A program made the position numbers and the translations under genes. The notes under the pieces were generated by a model, which ran no database searches, had not been told where the DNA came from, and saw only the letters and a list, made by a program, of their open reading frames with translations. This document shows positions 57,073-64,000 of a stretch of DNA of 64,000 nucleotides, piece after piece. The number at the start of each line of letters is the position of its first letter. Position 1 is the stretch's first letter. The stretch lies in IMG/VR virus record IMGVR_UViG_3300037882_003354, positions 62,001-126,000 of that record. One strand, given 5' to 3'.

Positions 57073-57100
57073 TTGACAAGCTCAGGGTTTCCTGTATAAT
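57073..57100 (+). promoter_or_regulatory. sigma70 promoter upstream of tRNA
   Basis: TTGACA-16-TATAAT. Confidence 0.8.
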
Positions 57101-57145
57101 CTGATAAATAGACTCACCTGCTCAGATGGGTCACATGTTATTTAT

Positions 57146-57229
57146 GCCCGGGTGGTGAAATGGTAGACACAAGGGACTTAAAATCCCTCGGCGCAAGCTG
57201 TACCGGTTCGAGTCCGGTCCCGGGCACCA
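57146..57229 (+). tRNA. trnL-UAA: tRNA-Leu (anticodon UAA)
   Basis: GCCCGGG/CCCGGGC acceptor stem, TGGTAGAC D-loop, AGGGA-CTTAAAA-TCCCT anticodon arm, long variable arm, GTTCGAGTC, encoded CCA. Confidence 0.97.
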
Positions 57230-57231
57230 CA

Positions 57232-57640
57232 GAGTATGCTCCATACTCATCCGTTCACTGGAGCAAGACCTGTTTTGAGTACTCCAATATTATCCAATTG
57301 ATAATGATATGAGTATCTTGACAGGCCTCCGCTGAATATTTCCACATACTAGTATTGAGTATCTCCAGAGTAAGTCCTGATACTAATATCGAGTATCTGC
57401 CCGGGAGTATCTGAGTATTGAGTATGGGTATCTGCTCCGGAGTAAGTCCTGATACTAGTATTGAGTATGTATTATGTGTATGTATTTGGAGTATCATGGT
57501 AAATACTATACACACAGGAGTTACCATTATGATGATTGCACTATACTTTCTCTTCATGTTCATATTCTACATGGCGTTCTTATACTATTTCCGAGACTGA
57601 GTAACCGCATACTCCGGAGGTATGTTATCTCCTGGAGTAT
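57232..57640. repeat. GAGTA-rich tract with 18-bp direct repeat and palindromes
   Basis: 14 GAGTA copies counted on + strand; GAGTAAGTCCTGATACTA at 57368 and 57440. Confidence 0.85.
57529..57600 (+). CDS. 23-aa hydrophobic membrane peptide
   Basis: MMIALYFLFMFIFYMAFLYYFRD; AGGAG SD and TAAATA upstream. Confidence 0.5.
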   Translation: MMIALYFLFMFIFYMAFLYYFRD

Positions 57641-57721
57641 GTGATTCACACGCCCACCCTCGCCGTCCATCCCCAGACTGCCTGTTCGAACGCACGGTCA
57701 TCTTGTTGTTGTTGTGACTGT

Positions 57722-57749
57722 ATTATAGCGGTCTGACTCCATTCGTCAA
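57722..57749 (-). promoter_or_regulatory. leftward sigma70 promoter
   Basis: TTGACG-16-TATAAT on minus strand. Confidence 0.7.
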
Positions 57750-57752
57750 TCC

Positions 57753-57777
57753 AAGACCCTGCACCGTGTAGGGTCTT
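57753..57777. other. 11-bp inverted repeat between divergent promoters
   Basis: AAGACCCTGCA-CCG-TGTAGGGTCTT (one G-T pair). Confidence 0.75.
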
Positions 57778-57787
57778 TCTTCTGCGC

Positions 57788-57815
57788 TTGACAATCTCTC
57801 ACCGTGTGCTATAGT
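57788..57815 (+). promoter_or_regulatory. early promoter cassette (TATAGTACTGACAT type)
   Basis: TTGACA-16-TATAGT with TGn. Confidence 0.85.
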
Positions 57816-57842
57816 ACTGACATTGCAACAACGAAAGACATC

Positions 57843-58025
57843 ATGTATTTCCAACTCAGCTGGGTGTTCTCAAACGATCACGAGTGGCATAAGAACTTCG
57901 ACAGCCTGCACGAGCGTGAGATGTTCATTAACACCACCGGGCTCCTGACCCATCCGGACATCGTGCGTGTGACTGTTCAGATTGGCCAGTGCTCAGCTGA
58001 CCTGAAAAATGTCTTGACAGCCTGA
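57843..58025 (+). CDS. small early protein
   Basis: Start moved to 57843; 60 aa. Confidence 0.65.
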   Translation: MYFQLSWVFSNDHEWHKNFDSLHEREMFINTTGLLTHPDIVRVTVQIGQCSADLKNVLTA

Positions 58026-58041
58026 ATCATTGTGCTATAGT
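58014..58041 (+). promoter_or_regulatory. early promoter cassette
   Basis: TTGACA-16-TATAGT with TGn. Confidence 0.85.
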
Positions 58042-58067
58042 ACTGACATCAACGCAAGGAGCCACTC

Positions 58068-58256
58068 ATGGAATTTGATCTAGACATCAACTGGCGCGAG
58101 ATCCGGGATCAGAAGATCTGGCTGTTCAACGCCACCGACCACCAGAGCACACCCTGGGAGCGCCGACAATGCGATGCTCTGCTGGACCTGCTGAGTGACA
58201 TCCAGCGGCAGGCCCTGGAGTCAGGCCATGTGGAGAGCGACGTCTTGGGGTTTTAA
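58068..58256 (+). CDS. small early protein
   Basis: 62 aa, AAGGAG SD. Confidence 0.75.
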   Translation: MEFDLDINWREIRDQKIWLFNATDHQSTPWERRQCDALLDLLSDIQRQALESGHVESDVLGF

Positions 58257-58266
58257 CCACTACCGC

Positions 58267-58294
58267 TTGACAACCTGATGGATTGTGTTATAGT
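58267..58294 (+). promoter_or_regulatory. early promoter cassette
   Basis: TTGACA-16-TATAGT with TGn. Confidence 0.85.
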
Positions 58295-58324
58295 ACTGAC
58301 ATTGCAACAAAGAAGGAGAACCTG

Positions 58325-58519
58325 ATGACCAACGAACAACTGGCAAAAAGCATCCGTCACGGCATGTTCGGCAGCCGTAAGAGCTACGACGAGGCCATGG
58401 AGTACGCCCACAGTGTGGCACGAGCCACGGGTGAGACGGCGGCGGTGATGACTGCCGTGCAGGTGGTGGTGAACACCATCGCAGAAATGATCCTGGAGAA
58501 CGAACGTGCTGAGGCCTGA
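58325..58519 (+). CDS. small early protein
   Basis: Start moved to 58325 (AAGGAG); 64 aa. Confidence 0.75.
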   Translation: MTNEQLAKSIRHGMFGSRKSYDEAMEYAHSVARATGETAAVMTAVQVVVNTIAEMILENERAEA

Positions 58520-58623
58520 TGGCTGGACCGGCTGGCCGGCCGGGCTGTTGCAGGACGATGACCGGGGCCTGAGCCGGTGGCTGGCCACCCGTCTGGATGC
58601 CGGATACATCCTGCGCCACCGGC

Positions 58624-58651
58624 TTGACTTGTTGACGACACCTGCTATAAT
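58624..58651 (+). promoter_or_regulatory. early promoter cassette
   Basis: TTGACT-16-TATAAT with TGn. Confidence 0.8.
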
Positions 58652-58681
58652 ACACTCATGATGACGCAAAAGGAGATGGTG

Positions 58682-58909
58682 ATGAAGCGAGACCGTTTTG
58701 CCATGTACACGCCGGCTGGCGATCAGGCAGTGAGTCAGATGGTGGCCACGGCACGACGCCTGGCCTGGAGCTGGCCCGAGGTGCAGTTCCAACTGCAGGT
58801 GCTCAGCCGCACCGCCGGCTGTGAGGAGACCCTGGACACCGCCGTGCGCGAATGCGTGTATGATGCACTGGGTTTTGGCGCACAAGGAGTCTGCTTCTAT
58901 GACTACTGA
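58682..58909 (+). CDS. small early protein
   Basis: Start moved to 58682 (AGGAG); 75 aa. Confidence 0.7.
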   Translation: MKRDRFAMYTPAGDQAVSQMVATARRLAWSWPEVQFQLQVLSRTAGCEETLDTAVRECVYDALGFGAQGVCFYDY

Positions 58910-59108
58910 TGCCGCCGAGCGGGACCTGGACATCTTGATCCGGTGGATCGCCCATGAACACCTGAGCATCAGCACTCTGGAGGCCCGGGGCCGGGACAGC
59001 CTGGACTTCCACGATGTGCATGTGGATGCCATCAGGAGTGCGCTGCATGCGGCATTCCAACTGGGCCAGTCCAATGGATTGAACGCTGGCTACCGCGACC
59101 TGCTGTAA
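58899..59108 (+). CDS. DUF6900-like small protein
   Basis: IA..HL.I.TLE.R..DSLDFHDV.V..I..AL.AAF..G recalled as DUF6900 pattern; AAGGAG SD. Confidence 0.65.
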   Translation: MTTDAAERDLDILIRWIAHEHLSISTLEARGRDSLDFHDVHVDAIRSALHAAFQLGQSNGLNAGYRDLL

Positions 59109-59142
59109 TACATTCATCAACGTAACACAAGGAGAGATAAAA

Positions 59143-59346
59143 ATGGCACAATTTCAAGTCATGGTGACCATGATCGTGGAAGCCCACAGCGACTCAGAGG
59201 CCTGGAGCATAGCCGAGGCGGCCCTGGACCATCTGGTGTGGCCAGGCACGCCCATACTGCGCTGCACAGTGGGTGAAGTGGACGAGGGTACGCCTGACCA
59301 GCGCATCGCGGCTTCGTTGTCGGACCTTGACAACACCCTGGACTGA
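59143..59346 (+). CDS. small early protein
   Basis: 67 aa, AAGGAG SD. Confidence 0.7.
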   Translation: MAQFQVMVTMIVEAHSDSEAWSIAEAALDHLVWPGTPILRCTVGEVDEGTPDQRIAASLSDLDNTLD

Positions 59347-59355
59347 TGTTATAAT
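59327..59355 (+). promoter_or_regulatory. early promoter cassette (TATAATACATTCATCA type)
   Basis: TTGACA-17-TATAAT with TGn. Confidence 0.85.
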
Positions 59356-59385
59356 ACATTCATCAACGTAACGCAAGGAGATGAC

Positions 59386-59547
59386 ATGAGAAATTACCGA
59401 GCCTATTACAAGGGCAAGACCTTCGACGTGCAGGCGCCCAACTCATTCCAGGCGCAGGAGGCGGCTGCCCGGATCCTGCGCATCAAGAAGACCTGGGAGG
59501 TGGCTGTGGTGCTGTTGGATGTGCCACTTGACACCACCACACTCTGA
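59386..59547 (+). CDS. 53-aa early protein
   Basis: Below cutoff; MRNYRAYYKGKTFDVQAPNSFQAQEAAA...; AAGGAG SD. Confidence 0.7.
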   Translation: MRNYRAYYKGKTFDVQAPNSFQAQEAAARILRIKKTWEVAVVLLDVPLDTTTL

Positions 59548-59556
59548 TGCTATACT
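59528..59556 (+). promoter_or_regulatory. early promoter cassette
   Basis: TTGACA-17-TATACT with TGn. Confidence 0.8.
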
Positions 59557-59580
59557 ACGGCACGAACAACGCAAAAGGAC

Positions 59581-59796
59581 ATGAACATGACATGGGACAG
59601 AGCAGGCCAACGAGTGGCTGGAGTCTACCTGGGCTACACCGTGGCGGGCCTGGTGACGGAAAGCCGAGTCAAGTATGGTGGTCGGGTGCAACACACTCTG
59701 CAACTGGATCAGCCCATGACCTTGTTCAGCACGGAACGCTCGGTCTTGCTCATGGACGAACGCGATCTTTTTAAGACCGGCCGGGAGCCTGCATGA
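59581..59796 (+). CDS. small early protein
   Basis: 71 aa (or start 59587), AAGGA SD. Confidence 0.75.
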   Translation: MNMTWDRAGQRVAGVYLGYTVAGLVTESRVKYGGRVQHTLQLDQPMTLFSTERSVLLMDERDLFKTGREPA

Positions 59797-60047
59797 CGGA
59801 CACCATGAACCGGGAACAGTTCATCCGGTATGCCCGAGAGGCACTGAGCCCGGATGTTCTGGAGGGGCTCTACGAACGCATCAGTGAGCACAATGGCGAG
59901 GTCACTCAGTTCGGCGACAGCTGGCCCGGTGCCCTGGTCAGCATCCGGAGTCAGATTGAGGATGTGCATGCCATTGAGCGCCAGTTGGCCCGGCTGGAAG
60001 CTCGTGAGCCCAGGTGTTTCCACTTCCGTGTGCAGAGTCCCAGATAA
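59793..60047 (+). CDS. small early protein
   Basis: 84 aa, ATGA overlap. Confidence 0.7.
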   Translation: MTDTMNREQFIRYAREALSPDVLEGLYERISEHNGEVTQFGDSWPGALVSIRSQIEDVHAIERQLARLEAREPRCFHFRVQSPR

Positions 60048-60050
60048 GGC

Positions 60051-60078
60051 TTGACAATCTGAATCGTTCTGTTATAGT
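60051..60078 (+). promoter_or_regulatory. early promoter cassette
   Basis: TTGACA-16-TATAGT with TGn. Confidence 0.85.
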
Positions 60079-60109
60079 ACTGACATTGCAACAAAGAAAG
60101 GAAGACGAC

Positions 60110-60445
60110 ATGACTGAAGAAGAAATCATCATCCGTGCAGTGGAGTTGGGCCGTCAGGCTGCTCGCCAGGCCACCCAGGATTACCTGGATGCCAACGGTG
60201 AGCACCACTTCGACTGTGGGTTCGCATGGGTCAAGGTGTCCGCAGACGGCCGCAGTCGAGTGGGACGCGCACTCAAGAAGGCTGGCTTTAATAAGCCCTA
60301 CGGCGAAAAAGGTCTCCAGATGTGGAACCCGTCGGGCCACTTCACGCAGTCCAGGACTGCCAAGGAGTACGGCGCCAGGGCCATGGCTGAGGTGCTCAAG
60401 ACCCGCCTGGGAGTAGAGGCCGTTGGACTCGGCCGGGCAGACTGA
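60110..60445 (+). CDS. small early protein
   Basis: Start moved to 60110 (AAGGA); CGFAWV..WNP..TQS..KE.GA. Confidence 0.75.
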   Translation: MTEEEIIIRAVELGRQAARQATQDYLDANGEHHFDCGFAWVKVSADGRSRVGRALKKAGFNKPYGEKGLQMWNPSGHFTQSRTAKEYGARAMAEVLKTRLGVEAVGLGRAD

Positions 60446-60446
60446 C

Positions 60447-60602
60447 ATGAAGGTCATTTACAATGGCCTGCTGGGCGGGTGGTACATCGTGCGCGGCCCA
60501 CACCACACGCCCCTGGGCGGCAGGTTTGACAGCCGTGAGGCCGCGCTGGCGCATCTGAAAAGAAGGAATGCCCCTACAGGCAGTCGGGGCTTGACAAGTT
60601 GA
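60447..60602 (+). CDS. 51-aa early protein
   Basis: Below cutoff; MKVIYNGLLGGWYIVRGPHHTPLGGRF... Confidence 0.65.
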   Translation: MKVIYNGLLGGWYIVRGPHHTPLGGRFDSREAALAHLKRRNAPTGSRGLTS

Positions 60603-60618
60603 ATCGTTGTGTTATAGT
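60591..60618 (+). promoter_or_regulatory. early promoter cassette
   Basis: TTGACA-16-TATAGT with TGn. Confidence 0.85.
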
Positions 60619-60648
60619 ACTGACATTGCAACAAACAAGGGAAACAAG

Positions 60649-60909
60649 ATGAGCAACTACCCCAACATGTCGTATTGTGCGTTTGAGAACACCACCCTGG
60701 CCATGGGTCAGCTGTTGGGCATGATGTCGCAGGTGGACTGCCTGAAGGAAATGGACTTGTCGCGTGACGAGTTGCGCGCCTTCCGTAACTTGAAGGACCT
60801 GTGCGAGCAGTTCCTGGAGGGCGCCGAGGGCCTGGAGAGCGCCGACGAAGAATACGACGGGCAGCCGGATGAAGCCCAGGAATGGGAATCGTTTGATCCA
60901 GACTGTTGA
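60649..60909 (+). CDS. small acidic early protein
   Basis: Start moved to 60649; NMSYCAFENT motif, acidic tail. Confidence 0.75.
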   Translation: MSNYPNMSYCAFENTTLAMGQLLGMMSQVDCLKEMDLSRDELRAFRNLKDLCEQFLEGAEGLESADEEYDGQPDEAQEWESFDPDC

Positions 60910-60934
60910 CACAGGGCCGCAAGGCCTGTATAAT
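60906..60934 (+). promoter_or_regulatory. early promoter cassette
   Basis: TTGACA-17-TATAAT. Confidence 0.85.
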
Positions 60935-60967
60935 ACATTCATCACAACGCAACGAAAAGGAAACACC

Positions 60968-61171
60968 ATGGAACTGATCCTGAACACGCCCAAGCAACAC
61001 ATGATCGCCACCCTGCTCTGGGAGGCTCCCGACGATCTGACGGTGCAGGCAGTACTGCGCATCTACGGTGCTGAAGCTCGCGCCATCCAGGACCTGATGA
61101 TCGTCACCAGTCTGGACCACGTGGACAACGTGGAAGAAGCACAGAGCATCCTGCAATCCTTTCGCAAGTAA
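60968..61171 (+). CDS. small early protein
   Basis: Start moved to 60968 (AAGGA); 67 aa. Confidence 0.75.
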   Translation: MELILNTPKQHMIATLLWEAPDDLTVQAVLRIYGAEARAIQDLMIVTSLDHVDNVEEAQSILQSFRK

Positions 61172-61187
61172 TTAATAGGCTCACAAG

Positions 61188-61328
61188 ATGACCACGAAAA
61201 TCGGCACCAAGATCCCATCCAGCACCGGCGGTGTCATCACCTTCACCCGTACTGGGCTGATCCATACAGCAGGCAAGGCCTACAGCGGCCGCTCGGTGGA
61301 CACCACTGAGGCCAAGAAGAAGGCTTGA
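61188..61328 (+). CDS. 46-aa early protein
   Basis: Below cutoff; MTTKIGTKIPSSTGGVITFTRTGLIHTAG...; stop overlaps next -35. Confidence 0.55.
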   Translation: MTTKIGTKIPSSTGGVITFTRTGLIHTAGKAYSGRSVDTTEAKKKA

Positions 61329-61352
61329 CAAGCAGACTGATCCTGCTATACT
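61325..61352 (+). promoter_or_regulatory. early promoter cassette
   Basis: TTGACA-16-TATACT with TGn. Confidence 0.85.
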
Positions 61353-61382
61353 ACATTCATCAACAACGCAAAGGCAACAGAC

Positions 61383-61616
61383 ATGGACTACGATGTGCGC
61401 AAGTTTACCAACAAGTTGATTGACCTCCGTGACGAGGGCATGATCAGCGACCGTGACATTGTCATGGCAGCGCTCAAGTACATGAGCGAAGATGATGTGC
61501 GCGACATGTGCGAGTGCAACGGCTTTGACGAGATCATGGACCTGGTGCCGGATGAAGATGAAGACGAGGCCCTGTTGAGCAATTTCAACTATGTCGGCTC
61601 GCGCCACCACTATTAA
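61383..61616 (+). CDS. small acidic early protein
   Basis: 77 aa; LKYMSEDDVRDMCECN. Confidence 0.75.
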   Translation: MDYDVRKFTNKLIDLRDEGMISDRDIVMAALKYMSEDDVRDMCECNGFDEIMDLVPDEDEDEALLSNFNYVGSRHHY

Positions 61617-61628
61617 AAAGGATTTGAC

Positions 61629-61910
61629 ATGAAAGGCGGAACTCTGTTCTATCGCGTGATCCCGGCAGACAAGGATCGTGGCTACTCGCTGTTGACCAGC
61701 TGGGACAAACCAGTGGTCCAGCGCACCTGCTACACCATGAGCAGCATGACCAACCCCAGTCGTGCAGCCATGATGGCCAGTCTGGCTGAAACCCAGCGGC
61801 GTGGTGGTGCAGAGCATCTGGTGGACACCACGGAACTCAACATCCAGAAGAAATTAGCCCGACTCTTCGGTGAAGACGACGCACCCGCCAAAACCGACGT
61901 AACCTGTTGA
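61629..61910 (+). CDS. small early protein
   Basis: 93 aa, AAGGA SD. Confidence 0.6.
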   Translation: MKGGTLFYRVIPADKDRGYSLLTSWDKPVVQRTCYTMSSMTNPSRAAMMASLAETQRRGGAEHLVDTTELNIQKKLARLFGEDDAPAKTDVTC

Positions 61911-62017
61911 TTTATAAGACCCCAAGACGCTCTGTCGCAGCTGGAACGCCTCAAACGGGTCGGTATGCGTGAAAGAACATTTTAGAGCATTGTCGACGTC
62001 TTGAACCTGGAATCCTG

Positions 62018-62242
62018 ATGAATCACAGTCCCATTCTGCAGTGGACAGCCACTGCCGTGACACTGCTGGGCGCCATGCTCACAGCGGCAGCTCTGGATCC
62101 CTGGAATGTCTACTGTCTGAATGCCGGCAGTGGCCTGTGGCTCATCTGGGCCTGGCGGGTGCGCAGCCGCAGCTTGATCGTGGTCAACGCTGGCCTGGTG
62201 CTCATATACATGGCAGGCCTGGTCCGAGCCTTCTTTGCTTGA
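62018..62242 (+). CDS. small three-helix membrane protein
   Basis: 74 aa, largely hydrophobic. Confidence 0.7.
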   Translation: MNHSPILQWTATAVTLLGAMLTAAALDPWNVYCLNAGSGLWLIWAWRVRSRSLIVVNAGLVLIYMAGLVRAFFA

Positions 62243-62266
62243 CAATCTGGATCATTGTGCTATAGT
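62239..62266 (+). promoter_or_regulatory. early promoter cassette
   Basis: TTGACA-16-TATAGT with TGn. Confidence 0.85.
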
Positions 62267-62296
62267 ACTGACATCGCAACACAACAAGGAAGACAC

Positions 62297-62554
62297 ATGA
62301 AGAAAGACCTTATGACCCGTGACCTGAAACGGCATGCCCTGGTACAAGACACCGTGACTGGCTTTGTGCAGGCTCAGTACGAATTGCATGACAGCCATGC
62401 CTACGCCACCGGCTACATGGAGAGCCTGCTGGTGCAGATCTTGACCTATCACGTGACTGAGGCCAACCGTGCCCGATTCCTGGATGAGCTGGCTCGCAGC
62501 GCCGACAAGGCTCGGGTGGAGAGCACCTACAGGGCATTGACCCTGGCTGCGTGA
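62297..62554 (+). CDS. small early protein
   Basis: Start moved to 62297 (AAGGA); 85 aa. Confidence 0.7.
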   Translation: MKKDLMTRDLKRHALVQDTVTGFVQAQYELHDSHAYATGYMESLLVQILTYHVTEANRARFLDELARSADKARVESTYRALTLAA

Positions 62555-62733
62555 TGACTGACTACCAGTTCTGCATGATCCTCCGCGATGGCGGCCATCG
62601 GATCATCACCGTGGGGGCGGAGAATCAGGATCACGCCCATGACATGTTCCATCGCATCTACGGCACGGACCTGCCGGCCTTCCTGTACCAGCACCCGCCG
62701 GCCTTTGTTCAAGAACTGGTTGACAACTCCTGA
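62551..62733 (+). CDS. small early protein
   Basis: 60 aa, overlaps upstream stop. Confidence 0.65.
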   Translation: MMTDYQFCMILRDGGHRIITVGAENQDHAHDMFHRIYGTDLPAFLYQHPPAFVQELVDNS

Positions 62734-62747
62734 ACTCCTGCTATAAT
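62720..62747 (+). promoter_or_regulatory. early promoter cassette
   Basis: TTGACA-16-TATAAT with TGn. Confidence 0.85.
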
Positions 62748-62780
62748 ACATTCATCACAACGCAACAGGGGAAGCAGAGC

Positions 62781-63053
62781 ATGGCCTACGTATTGATCAA
62801 TCGCAACCAGAAGGGACGGCAAGAAGCCATCCGCACCTATGCCACCTACAAGGGTGCCCTGATTGGCATGCGCGTGAGCAACCGCAACGCCGGCTGGACT
62901 CGTAGCAGCCGCTGCTACCTGGGCTACTGCGCCATGGAATGGGGTCATGATGCCGCTGGCGACTACGAGTACGCACCCTACGCCATCATGCACGAGTTTG
63001 ATTACAAGATGCGGCATCAGCCTCTTGACACGGTGCGTGGGGCCGCTGTATAA
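62781..63053 (+). CDS. small early protein
   Basis: 90 aa directly after promoter leader. Confidence 0.7.
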   Translation: MAYVLINRNQKGRQEAIRTYATYKGALIGMRVSNRNAGWTRSSRCYLGYCAMEWGHDAAGDYEYAPYAIMHEFDYKMRHQPLDTVRGAAV

Positions 63054-63054
63054 T
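63025..63054 (+). promoter_or_regulatory. early promoter cassette
   Basis: TTGACA-18-TATAAT. Confidence 0.75.
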
Positions 63055-63084
63055 ACACACATGAAGACACAACAGGAGCAACAG

Positions 63085-63255
63085 ATGAATGACTTTAGAC
63101 GGGCCATGCGAGTCATGTGCTCTGCATGTCAAGAATTTCACCAGGTGAAGGATGTGAAATTCATTGACATCCAGGAAGATTATGCCGGCAGGGATCTGAT
63201 GACCTTTGAGTGCTCGGTGACCAGCACCCAACAAAAGGCCTACGTGCTGGGCTGA
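63085..63255 (+). CDS. small Cys-containing early protein
   Basis: Start moved to 63085 (AGGAG); CSAC...FEC. Confidence 0.7.
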   Translation: MNDFRRAMRVMCSACQEFHQVKDVKFIDIQEDYAGRDLMTFECSVTSTQQKAYVLG

Positions 63256-63259
63256 TCAC

Positions 63260-63287
63260 TTGACAATTGGTGCCATGATGTTATAAT
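63260..63287 (+). promoter_or_regulatory. early promoter cassette
   Basis: TTGACA-16-TATAAT with TGn. Confidence 0.85.
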
Positions 63288-63317
63288 ACACACATGATGA
63301 CACAACTGGAGCAACAC

Positions 63318-63518
63318 ATGAATGAATTCGTAGCATCGGCAGTGGATCGGGTGGAGAGCAAGTTCCTGGTCCACTGCGACACTGATGTTCCAGCCGAGAT
63401 CCTGGCTGATGTCCTGCACTATTGCCGGGTCAAAGGCATTGACTTCGACAACGAGCTGCGCCTGGCTCGTGACTACGTGGAGGCAGAACTGGCTGAGTTT
63501 TTCGGTGTAGGTGCTTGA
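63318..63518 (+). CDS. small early protein
   Basis: Start moved to 63318 (GGAG); LADVLHYC..KGIDF. Confidence 0.75.
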   Translation: MNEFVASAVDRVESKFLVHCDTDVPAEILADVLHYCRVKGIDFDNELRLARDYVEAELAEFFGVGA

Positions 63519-63542
63519 CAACCGGAGCGATCCTGCTATAAT
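63515..63542 (+). promoter_or_regulatory. early promoter cassette
   Basis: TTGACA-16-TATAAT with TGn. Confidence 0.85.
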
Positions 63543-63572
63543 GCTGACATGGACAACGCAAAGGAGCAGCAA

Positions 63573-63875
63573 ATGGAACTGAACACACGGCAGGTACGGG
63601 CAATTGCATTGAAGGCAACGGACAAGCCCTTCCACACTTGGACGGACAAGACCAGCGACTACGATGACGCACGACGCAGCGTGGTGTGGAGTTTTTATGG
63701 CACGGGTGGGGCACAGGCATTGTTTGACCTGTTGCAGGCAGAGTTTGCACGGCTGGGCGTGACGAATAAGTTGACGCTCACGGGCACTGCCTATGAATAC
63801 GTGCGCGTGATTGCACCCCTGGGCAATCTGCCTGCCCTGCGCTGGCAGGACTTGCCTGAAGTTTATCCCATCTGA
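63573..63875 (+). CDS. small early protein
   Basis: Start moved to 63573 (AAGGAG); 100 aa. Confidence 0.7.
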   Translation: MELNTRQVRAIALKATDKPFHTWTDKTSDYDDARRSVVWSFYGTGGAQALFDLLQAEFARLGVTNKLTLTGTAYEYVRVIAPLGNLPALRWQDLPEVYPI

Positions 63876-63889
63876 TGGTGGCAGGGTGC

Positions 63890-63918
63890 TTGACAACACC
63901 AGCACCCTGCGCTATAAT
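63890..63918 (+). promoter_or_regulatory. early promoter cassette
   Basis: TTGACA-17-TATAAT. Confidence 0.85.
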
Positions 63919-63951
63919 ACACACATGACGACGCAACAACAGGAGAGGCAA

Positions 63952-63999
63952 ATGACGGTGACCCAATACCTGATGACCCAGGGCTGCGGCCAGGAAGAG
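63952..63999 (+). CDS. early protein, partial (runs off window end)
   Basis: AGGAG SD then ATG ACG GTG ACC CAA TAC CTG ATG... Confidence 0.6.
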   Translation, partial: MTVTQYLMTQGCGQEE

Positions 64000-64000
64000 A

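What the first reader, a model, noticed from the sequence alone, without database searches (positions are those of the whole stretch)
57788..64000. Array of promoter-leader cassettes, each carrying one or two tiny genes
Seen: 16 near-consensus sigma70 promoters in 6.2 kb, most with 16-bp spacer and extended TGn. They fall into sequence families extending past the -10: TATAGTACTGACAT(T/C)(G)CAAC (57810, 58036, 58289, 60073, 60613, 62261), TATA(A/C)TACATTCATCA..AACG (59350, 60929, 61347, 62742, degenerate at 59104) and TATAATACAC(A/T)CATGA (58646, 63049, 63282, 63913), each running into a CA-rich leader and SD. The next -35 is embedded in the upstream gene's last codons or its TGA stop (60906, 61325, 62239, 63515). 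Known: repeated early-promoter cassettes mediate modular gene shuffling in T4-type phages. Inference: a recombination-driven cassette array of host-takeover/anti-defence genes that may also titrate host RNA polymerase.
Basis: partly seen in the sequence, partly recalled or inferred. Interest (0 to 1): 0.65.

Follow-up and report, generated by a model that had tools for sequence, protein, structure and literature searches.

The report
Early-promoter cassette array in jumbo phage
A 322-kb freshwater jumbo phage carries about 30 near-perfect host-type promoters in a row, each joined to a short leader and one to three tiny genes of unknown function. Close relatives show that recombination between these repeated cassettes adds and removes gene modules, and many cassettes place a start codon on the predicted first base of the transcript.

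Summary
The finding region has 16 sigma70-type sites scoring at least 11/12, all on the + strand, where shuffles give 0.017. The three sequence families sit at the stated coordinates.

The array is larger than reported. It runs about 16.4 kb with about 30 promoters, in a 322.5-kb phage record with terminal repeats. At least 594 uncultured freshwater phage contigs encode a relative of the array's ATPase gene, and nearly all of the 77 loci examined carry a similar array.

It is best read as an early, host-RNA-polymerase-driven gene region. Each cassette is about 64 nt, from the -35 to the start codon, with an A/C-rich unstructured leader. No terminators were detected inside the array. 22 of the 24 window genes match no Pfam family.

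The recombination idea holds up:
- Gene order is scrambled among relatives.
- Cassettes evolve in concert within a genome.
- Four pairs of 92-99% identical relatives differ by clean cassette-to-cassette module indels.

It is not a strict PeSL, because the stem-loops and AT-rich tracts are missing. Host-takeover or anti-defence function and polymerase titration remain untested.

New here: an ATG lies at the predicted transcription start. It is in frame with the Shine-Dalgarno-led (SD-led) start in 36 of 38 cassettes, which suggests leaderless or dual initiation.

The parts
57073..57229 (+). First consensus promoter of the block (12/12, -35 at 57073), followed by tRNA-Leu(UAA) at 57146-57229.
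57753..57785 (+). Terminator-like hairpin (11-bp stem, then UUCUUCU) immediately upstream of the first small-gene cassette. It marks the left border of the array. The same AGGGTCTTT hairpin precedes the first cassette in relatives.
   Evidence: -18.4 kcal/mol, z = -4.3. (upstream sequences of gene family 41).
57788..58025 (+). Unit 1: family A cassette (-35 at 57788, 16-bp spacer, TATAGT) plus g1 at 57843-58025 (60 aa). The next -35 lies in g1's last codons.
58014..58256 (+). Unit 2: family A cassette plus g2 at 58068-58256 (62 aa).
58267..58519 (+). Unit 3: family A cassette plus g3 at 58325-58519 (64 aa).
58624..59346 (+). Unit 4: family C cassette (-35 TTGACT at 58624). An ATG at 58658 sits on the predicted start site, in frame with the SD-led ATG at 58682. 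Genes: g4 58682-58909 (75 aa), g5 58899-59108 (69 aa, DUF6900), g6 59143-59346 (67 aa). A degenerate family B cassette (TTGAAC, 19-nt spacer, TGTAAT) lies at 59079-59142, between g5 and g6.
59327..59547 (+). Unit 5: family B cassette (12/12) plus g7 at 59386-59547 (53 aa). Its -35 lies in g6's last codons.
59528..60047 (+). Unit 6: cassette with TATACT plus g8 59587-59796 (69 aa) and g9 59793-60047 (84 aa).
60051..60602 (+). Unit 7: family A cassette plus g10 60110-60445 (111 aa, phrog_22149) and g11 60447-60602 (51 aa). This unit is hyperdivergent in otherwise roughly 97% identical relatives.
60591..60909 (+). Unit 8: family A cassette plus g12 at 60649-60909 (86 aa). In a close relative, homology resumes at 60609, inside this spacer.
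60906..61328 (+). Unit 9: family B cassette (12/12). The TGA stop of g12 lies inside its TTGACA, and its spacer carries a GGCC-GCAA-GGCC hairpin. Genes: g13 60968-61171 (67 aa) and g14 61188-61328 (46 aa).
61325..62242 (+). Unit 10: family B cassette. The TGA stop of g14 lies inside its -35. Genes: g15 61383-61616 (77 aa), g16 61629-61910 (93 aa), g17 62018-62242 (74 aa, hydrophobic, DUF6552).
62239..62733 (+). Unit 11: family A cassette. The TGA stop of g17 lies inside its -35. Genes: g18 62297-62554 (85 aa) and g19 62554-62733 (59 aa).
62720..63053 (+). Unit 12: family B cassette (12/12) plus g20 at 62781-63053 (90 aa). g20's TAA stop lies inside the next -10.
63025..63255 (+). Unit 13: family C cassette (12/12, 18-bp spacer). 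The start-site ATG at 63061 is in frame with the SD-led ATG at 63085. Gene g21 63085-63255 (56 aa).
63260..63518 (+). Unit 14: family C cassette (12/12). The start-site ATG at 63294 is in frame with the SD-led ATG at 63318. Gene g22 63318-63518 (66 aa). A 39-bp stretch, 63268-63306 (spacer, -10 and start of the leader), is absent in contigs of three other lake metagenomes.
63515..63875 (+). Unit 15: cassette (12/12). The TGA stop of g22 lies inside its -35. The start-site ATG at 63549 is in frame with the SD-led ATG at 63573. Gene g23 63573-63875 (100 aa).
63890..64000 (+). Unit 16: family C cassette (12/12). A 9-bp G+C-rich hairpin encloses its -35. The start-site ATG at 63925 is in frame with the SD-led ATG at 63952. 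Gene g24 runs past the window end to 64149.

Best explanation
This is the early gene region of an uncultured freshwater jumbo phage (322.5 kb). It is read by the host's housekeeping-sigma RNA polymerase.

Layout. About 30 co-oriented promoter-leader cassettes spread over 16.4 kb, 16 of them in the finding region. Each cassette is about 64 nt: GC-TTGACA, a 16-18 nt spacer (often with TGn), TATAAT or TATAGT, the motif ACAyACAT, an A/C-rich unstructured leader, an AGGAG-type ribosome site, and ATG. Each drives one to three tiny genes, nearly all of unknown function. Gene ends overlap the next -35, and no terminator-like sites were detected inside the array. Transcription should therefore start independently at each unit and add up along the array. 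A hairpin terminator bounds it on the left and another lies about 320 nt after the last gene.

Recombination. Because the cassettes are direct repeats sharing 24-25 nt identical cores, homologous recombination between them deletes, inserts and reshuffles promoter-plus-gene modules and homogenises the cassettes within a genome. This works like T4-type PeSLs, but without their stem-loop terminator.

Start codons. In one cassette family the predicted first transcribed base is the A of an ATG kept in frame with the SD-led ATG. These mRNAs are probably translated leaderless as well as through the ribosome site. A few genes have only the leaderless start.

What is shown and what is inferred. Shown: the sequence architecture, its statistics, the scrambled gene order, concerted evolution, the cassette-to-cassette indels in relatives, and the frame constraint. 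Inferred: actual start sites, early timing, promoter strength, leaderless translation, and what the genes do.
For: Density and orientation. 16 sites observed against 0.017 expected. The array holds 30 sites in 16.6 kb, against 28 on both strands of the other 306 kb.

Cassette anatomy. Cassettes align in register over 64-69 nt. The gap from the -10 to the ATG is 30 nt in most, and 27 or 33 in others. Leaders are A/C-rich and weakly folded. No + strand terminator-like sites above chance occur inside the array, and the first is at genome position 136579. The left-border hairpin has z = -4.3.

Host polymerase. No RpoB-like, T7-type polymerase or sigma70 region-2 match in the genome. The nearest cultured relative for the array's ATPase gene is PA5oct, which relies on host polymerase and has TTGAC/TATAATA promoters.

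Relatives. The 77 loci examined carry 908 promoter-like sites, almost all co-oriented with the ATPase gene. Gene order is scrambled.

Breakpoints. Gene neighbours separated by a promoter stay adjacent in relatives less often than those without one (retention 0.25 against 0.37, p = 0.04). Rare junctions carry a promoter in 81 of 118 cases, stable ones in 7 of 17 (p = 0.03).

Concerted evolution. The best paralogue in the same genome beats the best orthologue in 14 of 15 spacers and 13 of 15 leaders. The nearest neighbour of a cassette lies in the same genome for 26 of 29.

Clean module indels. L086/L087, L030/L031 and two in L092/L094 have junctions inside the shared -10/ACAC core. 10 of 24 boundaries lie inside cassettes that cover about 9-10% of the arrays (p about 5e-4).

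Start-site ATG. Among 787 distinct cassettes the ATG count peaks at offset 6 after the -10, with 89 against at most 17 at neighbouring offsets. 36 of 38 such ATGs are in frame and open with the SD-led start, against a 35% background (p = 1e-13). Without this genome the count is 25 of 27, and by gene family 26 of 28. The g34 family switches between a leaderless cassette start and an SD-led start depending on context.
Against: - There is no RNA evidence. Start sites, timing and strength are predicted from consensus only, and the one metatranscriptome offered held next to none of the stretch.
- The host is unknown, so calling the promoters sigma70-type is a generic statement.
- Breakpoint enrichment in the distant comparisons is modest. 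It is confounded by selection to keep operons together and by relatedness among the loci.
- Some rearrangements in relatives lie more than 100 nt from any cassette. Within-operon neighbours are often broken between this genome and G001.
- Close relatives of this genome itself are colinear over 60609-63787. Recent cassette recombination is therefore shown in sister lineages, not in this genome.
- The frame constraint could partly reflect a fixed 24-nt leader or 3-nt slippage in CAA repeats.
- The absence of terminators rests on a simple pattern scan.
Confidence: 0.75

Rival explanations
1. The cassettes resemble each other only because each is independently selected to be an optimal promoter plus leader. 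Recombination between them plays no role in shaping the array.
For: The core elements (TTGACA, TATAAT, ACAyACAT, A/C-rich leader, AAGGAG) are shared by cassettes of every related genome examined, which is what selection on function predicts.
Against: Weakly constrained spacer positions are homogenised within a genome, and paralogues beat orthologues in 14 of 15 cases. Four indels in near-identical genome pairs have chimeric cassettes whose junction lies in the shared core. Boundaries are enriched about four-fold in cassettes.
Confidence: 0.07
2. The family-specific spacer and initial-transcribed sequences are operators or recognition sites for phage or host regulators. They would define temporal or regulatory sub-classes of early genes. 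Within-genome similarity would then reflect co-evolution with a genome-specific DNA-binding protein rather than gene conversion. This can coexist with the main explanation.
For: Family A shares most of a 16-nt spacer in this genome. In relatives a different spacer motif, TGGTAAAACC, sits at a fixed position in 153 of 789 cassettes from 41 loci and is absent here. The families are spatially clustered: A and B early in the array, C later. The array encodes a winged-helix protein (HTH_39 match).
Against: No regulator has been identified or linked to any motif. Families B and most of C have unrelated spacers. Operators would not explain the chimeric cassettes at indel junctions.
Confidence: 0.3
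3. The in-frame ATG at the predicted start site is not translated. It would be a by-product of a preferred A-T start context, a fixed 24-nt leader, and 3-nt slippage in CAA/CAG repeats.
For: The triplet at that position is AT-N in about half of all cassettes (ATA 173, ATG 89, ATC 85), so ATG is one variant among several. In this genome most leaders have the same length whatever the family. The leaders are rich in CAA/ACA repeats.
Against: Across the clade the SD-led start lies at many offsets (24 to 34) and is in frame with that position only 35% of the time. When the triplet is ATG it is in frame in 36 of 38 cassettes (25 of 27 without this genome, 26 of 28 gene families). 34 cassettes have the ATG as the only start of an ORF of at least 35 codons with no ribosome site. 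Gene family 41 is like this in 9 of 11 members.
Confidence: 0.25
4. The main role of the array is to act as a sink that titrates host RNA polymerase away from host promoters, with the genes themselves of secondary importance.
For: About 30 consensus promoters per genome copy, all stronger on paper than typical host promoters. This is an inference only.
Against: Many of the small ORFs are conserved as proteins across relatives at 30-80% identity. Each has a consensus ribosome site at a fixed distance. This shows selection on the products. No test of titration was possible.
Confidence: 0.05

Closest known systems
PeSL (promoter-early stem-loop) cassettes in the hyperplastic regions of T4-type phages (Arbiol et al. 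2010, PMC2839356; Comeau et al. 2014, PMC4122927)
   Same: - Repeated, conserved cassettes with a consensus sigma70 promoter and a ribosome site plus start codon at the 3' end.
- The stop codon of the upstream gene lies at the 5' end of the cassette.
- They are placed in front of ORFans in the most plastic part of the genome.
- Indels between close relatives are bounded by two cassettes, leaving one chimeric cassette.
- The array also encodes a homologue of T4 NrdC.10.
   Different: - No general stem-loop terminator: 3 of 32 cassettes have a significant hairpin, against 2 of 60 controls.
- No AT-rich upstream tract: 48% A+T against 44% for the array.
- The conserved part is about 64 nt and extends downstream through the leader, rather than about 100 nt extending upstream.
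- The junctions seen lie in the -10/initial-transcribed core, not in an AT-rich region.
- Some cassettes carry a start-site ATG.
- Mini-circles were not tested.
Host-takeover module of Bacillus phage SPO1 (genes 37-60; as summarised in PMC6873191)
   Same: A compact block (12.4 kb and 26 genes in SPO1; 16.4 kb and about 48 genes here) of small early genes. They are organised in many short operons, each with promoters and ribosome sites typical of highly expressed genes, and are read by the host housekeeping sigma.
   Different: - No sequence relationship was found.
- No function is known for the genes here, so 'takeover' is only an analogy.
- The array is not visibly in a terminal redundancy.
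- All units here are co-oriented with no terminators detected between them.
- Cassette repeats and recombination have not, to my knowledge, been described for SPO1.
Pseudomonas jumbo phage PA5oct and Rak2-like jumbo phages
   Same: Jumbo myovirus-type genomes. PA5oct relies on host RNA polymerase, has 32 predicted TTGAC/TATAATA promoters, and carries tRNA-Leu(TAA). It has the closest cultured homologue of the array's ATPase g25, at 46.5% identity.
   Different: Megablast of the array finds nothing, and a tblastn search with the putative major-head-protein ORF finds no cultured relative. PA5oct early genes are not reported as one dense co-oriented cassette array. The start-site ATG feature is not described there.
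Leaderless mRNAs (lambda cI; many actinobacterial and mycobacteriophage genes)
   Same: An ATG lies 6-7 nt downstream of a -10 element with no ribosome site. This is the arrangement in g34, in gene family 41, and in 8 of 9 promoters of contig L010.
   Different: Here the leaderless ATG is usually combined with an in-frame SD-led ATG 21-30 nt downstream on the same mRNA. It is also part of a repeated, recombining promoter cassette. No start site has been measured. phiKZ, the jumbo phage with a mapped primary transcriptome, has no leaderless transcripts.

Membership tests
PeSL cassettes (T4-type phages) | Strong sigma70-consensus early promoter | tested here: met
   16 sites scoring at least 11/12 in the finding region and 30 in the array.
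PeSL cassettes (T4-type phages) | Stem-loop acting as terminator or attenuator within the cassette | tested here: not met
   Only 3 of 32 cassettes fold significantly better than shuffles (63890, 66272, 67666), against 2 of 60 controls. No terminator-like sites above chance on the + strand.
PeSL cassettes (T4-type phages) | AT-rich tract upstream of the -35 | tested here: not met
   48% A+T upstream against 44% for the array. The upstream sequence is the coding end of the previous gene.
PeSL cassettes (T4-type phages) | Ribosome site and start codon at the 3' end, with the upstream stop codon at the 5' end | tested here: met
PeSL cassettes (T4-type phages) | Located in front of ORFans in plastic regions | tested here: met
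   22 of 24 window genes match no Pfam family. Order and content vary among relatives.
PeSL cassettes (T4-type phages) | Indels between close relatives bounded by cassettes, leaving a chimeric cassette | tested here: met
   Seen in relatives, not in this genome: L086/L087, L030/L031, and two events in L092/L094.
PeSL cassettes (T4-type phages) | Excised mini-circles | not testable with these tools
   Only contigs were available for the runs laid, with no raw reads.
SPO1-type host-takeover module | Cluster of small early genes with strong promoters and ribosome sites | tested here: met
SPO1-type host-takeover module | Products shut off host processes or are toxic | not testable with these tools
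   No informative family matches.
SPO1-type host-takeover module | Location in the terminal redundancy | tested here: inconclusive
   The array lies at 119-136 kb of a record whose ends are classed as direct terminal repeats. The true genome ends are unknown.
Leaderless genes | Start codon at the 5' end of the transcript, with no ribosome site | tested here: inconclusive
   The sequence fits: an ATG 6-7 nt after the -10, no ribosome site for g34 and gene family 41, and a frame constraint in 36 of 38 cassettes. No start site was measured.

The most novel reading that the evidence does not exclude
In this abundant freshwater jumbo-phage clade the mobile unit may be a 'promoter plus start codon' cassette. 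The transcript would begin with AUG, so the cassette alone can express whatever ORF it lands in front of, in frame. Most early genes would keep two initiation modes on one mRNA: 5'-terminal leaderless and ribosome-site-led. That would keep early expression robust to changes in the host translation apparatus, or yield two N-terminal isoforms. Recombination between such cassettes would then be the main engine that creates and tests new early genes.
Probability: 0.35. Interest if true: 0.75.

Novelty: new variant of a known kind. Interest (0 to 1): 0.6.

Why it matters
- It extends cassette-mediated modular shuffling, so far documented for T4-type phages, to a very abundant uncultured freshwater jumbo-phage clade. 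This rests on base-level junctions rather than on correlation.
- A simpler cassette, without a stem-loop, appears to be enough.
- It gives a compact set of predicted very strong promoter-leader parts.
- It defines about 48 small early genes, of which 24 lie in the window, as candidates for host-interaction functions.
- The in-frame start-site ATG is a directly testable prediction about leaderless or dual translation initiation in phage early genes. It can be tested with reporters in vitro even without the host in culture.

Tried and rejected
- Megablast of the array against cultured phages found nothing.
- The putative major-head-protein ORF (weak phrog_773 match) found no relatives by tblastn among cultured phages or by pattern scan in IMG/VR. 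Relatives were reached instead through cassette motifs and the ATPase g25.
- Rfam found only the tRNA in the 20-kb block. The leaders belong to no described RNA family.
- A general PeSL-type hairpin was rejected, as was an AT-rich UP-like tract.
- Several 'joints' and loose ends in the laid contigs (61344/61374, 63049, 63074, 63302, 60113 to 58265) turned out to be other cassettes of the same family cross-mapping onto a shared 25-45 nt core. I did not count them as recombination.
- Host identification failed. Relatives of g25 sit in metagenome-assembled genomes (MAGs) labelled Ca. Planktophila, Aquiluna, Crocinitomicaceae, Ignavibacteria, Legionellales and Beijerinckia. That spread is too scattered to name a host.
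- The ESM Atlas gave only viral hypothetical clusters for g10.
- No other genetic code was used.
- Complex prediction, structure prediction and the large representative protein search were not used, because no claim here depends on them.

Full report
**Context.** The window is positions 62001-126000 of a 322,512-bp virus record with direct terminal repeats, that is, a jumbo phage. Window positions 1-56000 carry large ORFs on the - strand with virion, tail-fibre and major-head PHROG matches. At about 56000 the coding strand switches. A consensus promoter at 57073 precedes tRNA-Leu(UAA) at 57146-57229. A strong hairpin followed by a U-rich tract at 57753-57785 sits directly in front of the first small-gene promoter at 57788.

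**The observation.**
- The finding region has 16 sites scoring at least 11/12 to TTGACA-N16-18-TATAAT on the + strand and none on the - strand. Shuffles give 0.017.
- Eleven have a 16-bp spacer and 13 have TGn.
- The three extended motifs occur at exactly the stated coordinates, with zero expected by chance.
- Leaders are 52% A and 25% C and fold less stably than shuffles.
- Gene ends overlap the next promoter. A TGA stop lies inside TTGACA four times in the window, the -35 lies in the last codons five times, and one TAA stop lies inside a -10.
- The array continues beyond the window to genome position 135485. It holds about 30 sites scoring at least 11/12 in 16.6 kb, all on the + strand, against 28 on both strands of the remaining 306 kb.

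**Anatomy.**
- Cassettes align in register over 64-69 nt, from GC-TTGACA to the ATG.
- The distance from the -10 to the SD-led start is 30 nt in most, and 27 or 33 in others.
- I called 24 genes of 46-111 aa in the window and about 48 in the whole array.
- 22 of the 24 window genes match no Pfam family. g5 is DUF6900 and g17 is DUF6552. PHROG matches are few and all of unknown function.
- Beyond the window lie two paralogous AAA ATPases (g25 and g47, phrog_1250). They are homologues of T4 NrdC.10, and PA5oct is the closest cultured relative at 46.5% identity. An HTH_39 protein and a SprT-like protein are also there.
- No + strand terminator-like site above chance lies inside the array. The first is about 320 nt after the last gene.
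- No RpoB-like, T7-type polymerase or sigma70 region-2 match exists in the genome. This fits dependence on the host polymerase, as shown experimentally for PA5oct.

**Relatives.**
- Exact-pattern scans with the cassette motifs found other IMG/VR contigs with the same kind of array.
- The ATPase g25 found 594 or more IMG/VR contigs at 75-83% identity, and thousands of metagenome proteins.
- Lake and freshwater runs from 15 studies hold relatives that are about 97% identical, as estimated from the share of 31-mers held.
- Almost all of the 77 loci examined have co-oriented arrays, with up to 28 promoters in 20 kb.
- This architecture is therefore a hallmark of an abundant freshwater jumbo-phage clade. 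The host is unresolved, because MAG bins holding relatives are taxonomically scattered.

**Is it recombination-driven?**
- Gene order is not fixed. Most relatives have the order g27 .. g28 | g30 .. g38 g34 .. g14 | g10 | g25 g26. This genome has g10 .. g14 .. g25 g26 g27 g28 .. g30 .. g34 .. g38. G001 differs again.
- Across 63 arrays, gene neighbours separated by a promoter stay adjacent less often than those without one (retention 0.25 against 0.37, p = 0.04). Rare junctions carry a promoter more often than stable ones (81 of 118 against 7 of 17, p = 0.03). The effect is real but modest, and it is confounded by operon selection and by relatedness among the loci.
- Cassettes evolve in concert. 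For 15 cassettes of this genome with an orthologous gene-plus-cassette elsewhere, the best paralogue in the same genome beats the best orthologue in 14 spacers and 13 leaders. The nearest neighbour of a cassette lies in the same genome for 26 of 29.
- The decisive evidence comes from pairs of 92-99% identical relatives. L086 has two cassettes flanking a 266-bp promoter-plus-gene unit. L087 has one chimeric cassette, with the spacer variant of the left copy and the leader of the right copy. L030/L031 and two events in L092/L094 show the same pattern, with junctions inside the shared -10/ACAC core.
- Ten of 24 rearrangement boundaries lie inside cassettes, which cover 9-10% of the arrays (p about 5e-4).
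- Other indels lie away from cassettes.
- For this genome itself, contigs of four lake runs are colinear over 60609-63787. They show a 39-bp deletion that removes the spacer, -10 and start of the leader of the 63260 promoter. They also show a hyperdivergent g10-g11 unit, with homology resuming at 60609 inside the next cassette's spacer.

**Comparison with PeSLs.** The defining PeSL features were taken from PMC2839356.
- Met: the consensus promoter, the ribosome site and start at the 3' end, the placement before ORFans, and the cassette-bounded indels.
- Not met: the stem-loop terminator (3 of 32 cassettes) and the AT-rich upstream tract.
- The array therefore works like PeSLs but is not a strict member of that family.
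- It also resembles the SPO1 host-takeover module in layout, but no function or homology supports that name.

- In family C the triplet 7-9 nt after the -10, which is the expected transcription start, is ATG.
- In this genome all 12 such ATGs that precede an SD-led start are in frame with it, at spacings of 21, 24, 27 or 30 nt. Another is the only start of g34. A further one opens a 34-codon hydrophobic ORF.
- Among 787 distinct cassettes of the clade, the ATG count peaks sharply at that offset, with 89 against at most 17 at neighbouring offsets.
- Of 38 cassettes with both a start-site ATG and an SD-led start, 36 are in frame and open. The background for cassettes without the ATG is 35% (p = 1e-13). 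Without this genome the count is 25 of 27, and by gene family 26 of 28.
- Thirty-four further cassettes have the ATG as the sole start of an ORF of at least 35 codons with no ribosome site.
- The g34 family uses a leaderless cassette start where it has its own promoter and an SD-led start where it follows another gene.
- One 10-kb contig (L010) has 8 of 9 promoters of this leaderless type.
- This argues that 5'-terminal AUGs are read by ribosomes in the host, giving leaderless and dual-start early mRNAs. No RNA or protein data were available to confirm it.

**Verdict.** The cassette array and its recombination-driven plasticity hold. The functional labels (host takeover, anti-defence, polymerase titration) remain untested. 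The array is a new variant of a known kind of phage regulatory-cassette region, with a testable new twist in translation initiation.

Noticed in passing
Relatives L021-L100, G002, G004 (spacers of their promoters): A conserved spacer motif, TGGTAAAACC, sits at a fixed position 3-4 nt after the -35 in 153 of 789 distinct cassettes from 41 loci. It is absent from this genome, whose family A has its own conserved spacer. It may be an operator for a regulator.
   Followed up: partly
window 63268-63306: A 39-bp stretch covering the spacer, -10 and start of the leader of the 63260 promoter is missing in long contigs from three other lake metagenomes (X2, X3, X4). The junction has 3-nt microhomology and leaves TTGACAAT joined directly to the ribosome site of g22.
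   Followed up: partly
window 60150-60609: The g10-g11 unit is too divergent to be laid at 85% likeness in runs whose contigs match the flanks at 90-99%. A loose end shows a diverged g10 rather than a deletion. g10 is also the gene that most relatives keep just upstream of the ATPase. This pattern fits rapid diversification.
   Followed up: partly
window 57753-57785; relatives (upstream of gene family 41): The terminator-like hairpin ending in AGGGTCTTT that precedes the first cassette is conserved in several relatives. There the first cassette drives a leaderless gene (MTTQTVTRKKR...) instead of g1.
   Followed up: partly
window 58520-58623: A G+C-rich stretch of about 100 nt with GGCTGG/GGCCGG repeats lies between g3 and the 58624 promoter. 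Only a doubtful GTG-start ORF (58506-58661) overlaps the promoter. Its coding status is unclear.
   Followed up: no
window 57418-57749: An AT-richer stretch lies between the tRNA and the array. It holds a possible 23-codon very hydrophobic ORF with a ribosome site (ATG at 57529) and an 11/12 promoter-like site on the - strand at 57749.
   Followed up: no
L008 8207-9085 and 16598-17488 (genome 126207-127085 and 134598-135488): Two paralogous AAA ATPases (31% identical) lie in the array. They are homologues of T4 NrdC.10. Many GenBank records label this family 'thioredoxin' or 'clamp loader', which looks like annotation carry-over.
   Followed up: partly
L008 10272-10300 (genome 128272): The promoter of g28 has a hairpin in its spacer (GGGGCTCAGTCCCC). 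This is the one cassette whose spacer is more like its orthologues (0.81) than like any paralogue in the same genome. It resembles a PeSL-style promoter that travels with its gene.
   Followed up: partly
L010 (IMGVR_UViG_3300030095_002269, 10.2 kb): This contig has nine 12/12 promoters on one strand. Eight are followed after 6-7 nt by an ATG with no ribosome site, forming an almost purely leaderless gene array. The ATPase g25 is not on this contig.
   Followed up: partly
L101, L102 (MAG contigs): Short contigs encoding g25 relatives (68-70% identity) are binned in MAGs labelled Ca. Planktophila and Aquiluna, both freshwater Actinobacteria, a phylum where leaderless mRNAs are common. Others are binned in unrelated phyla, so this is only a weak host lead.
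   Followed up: no
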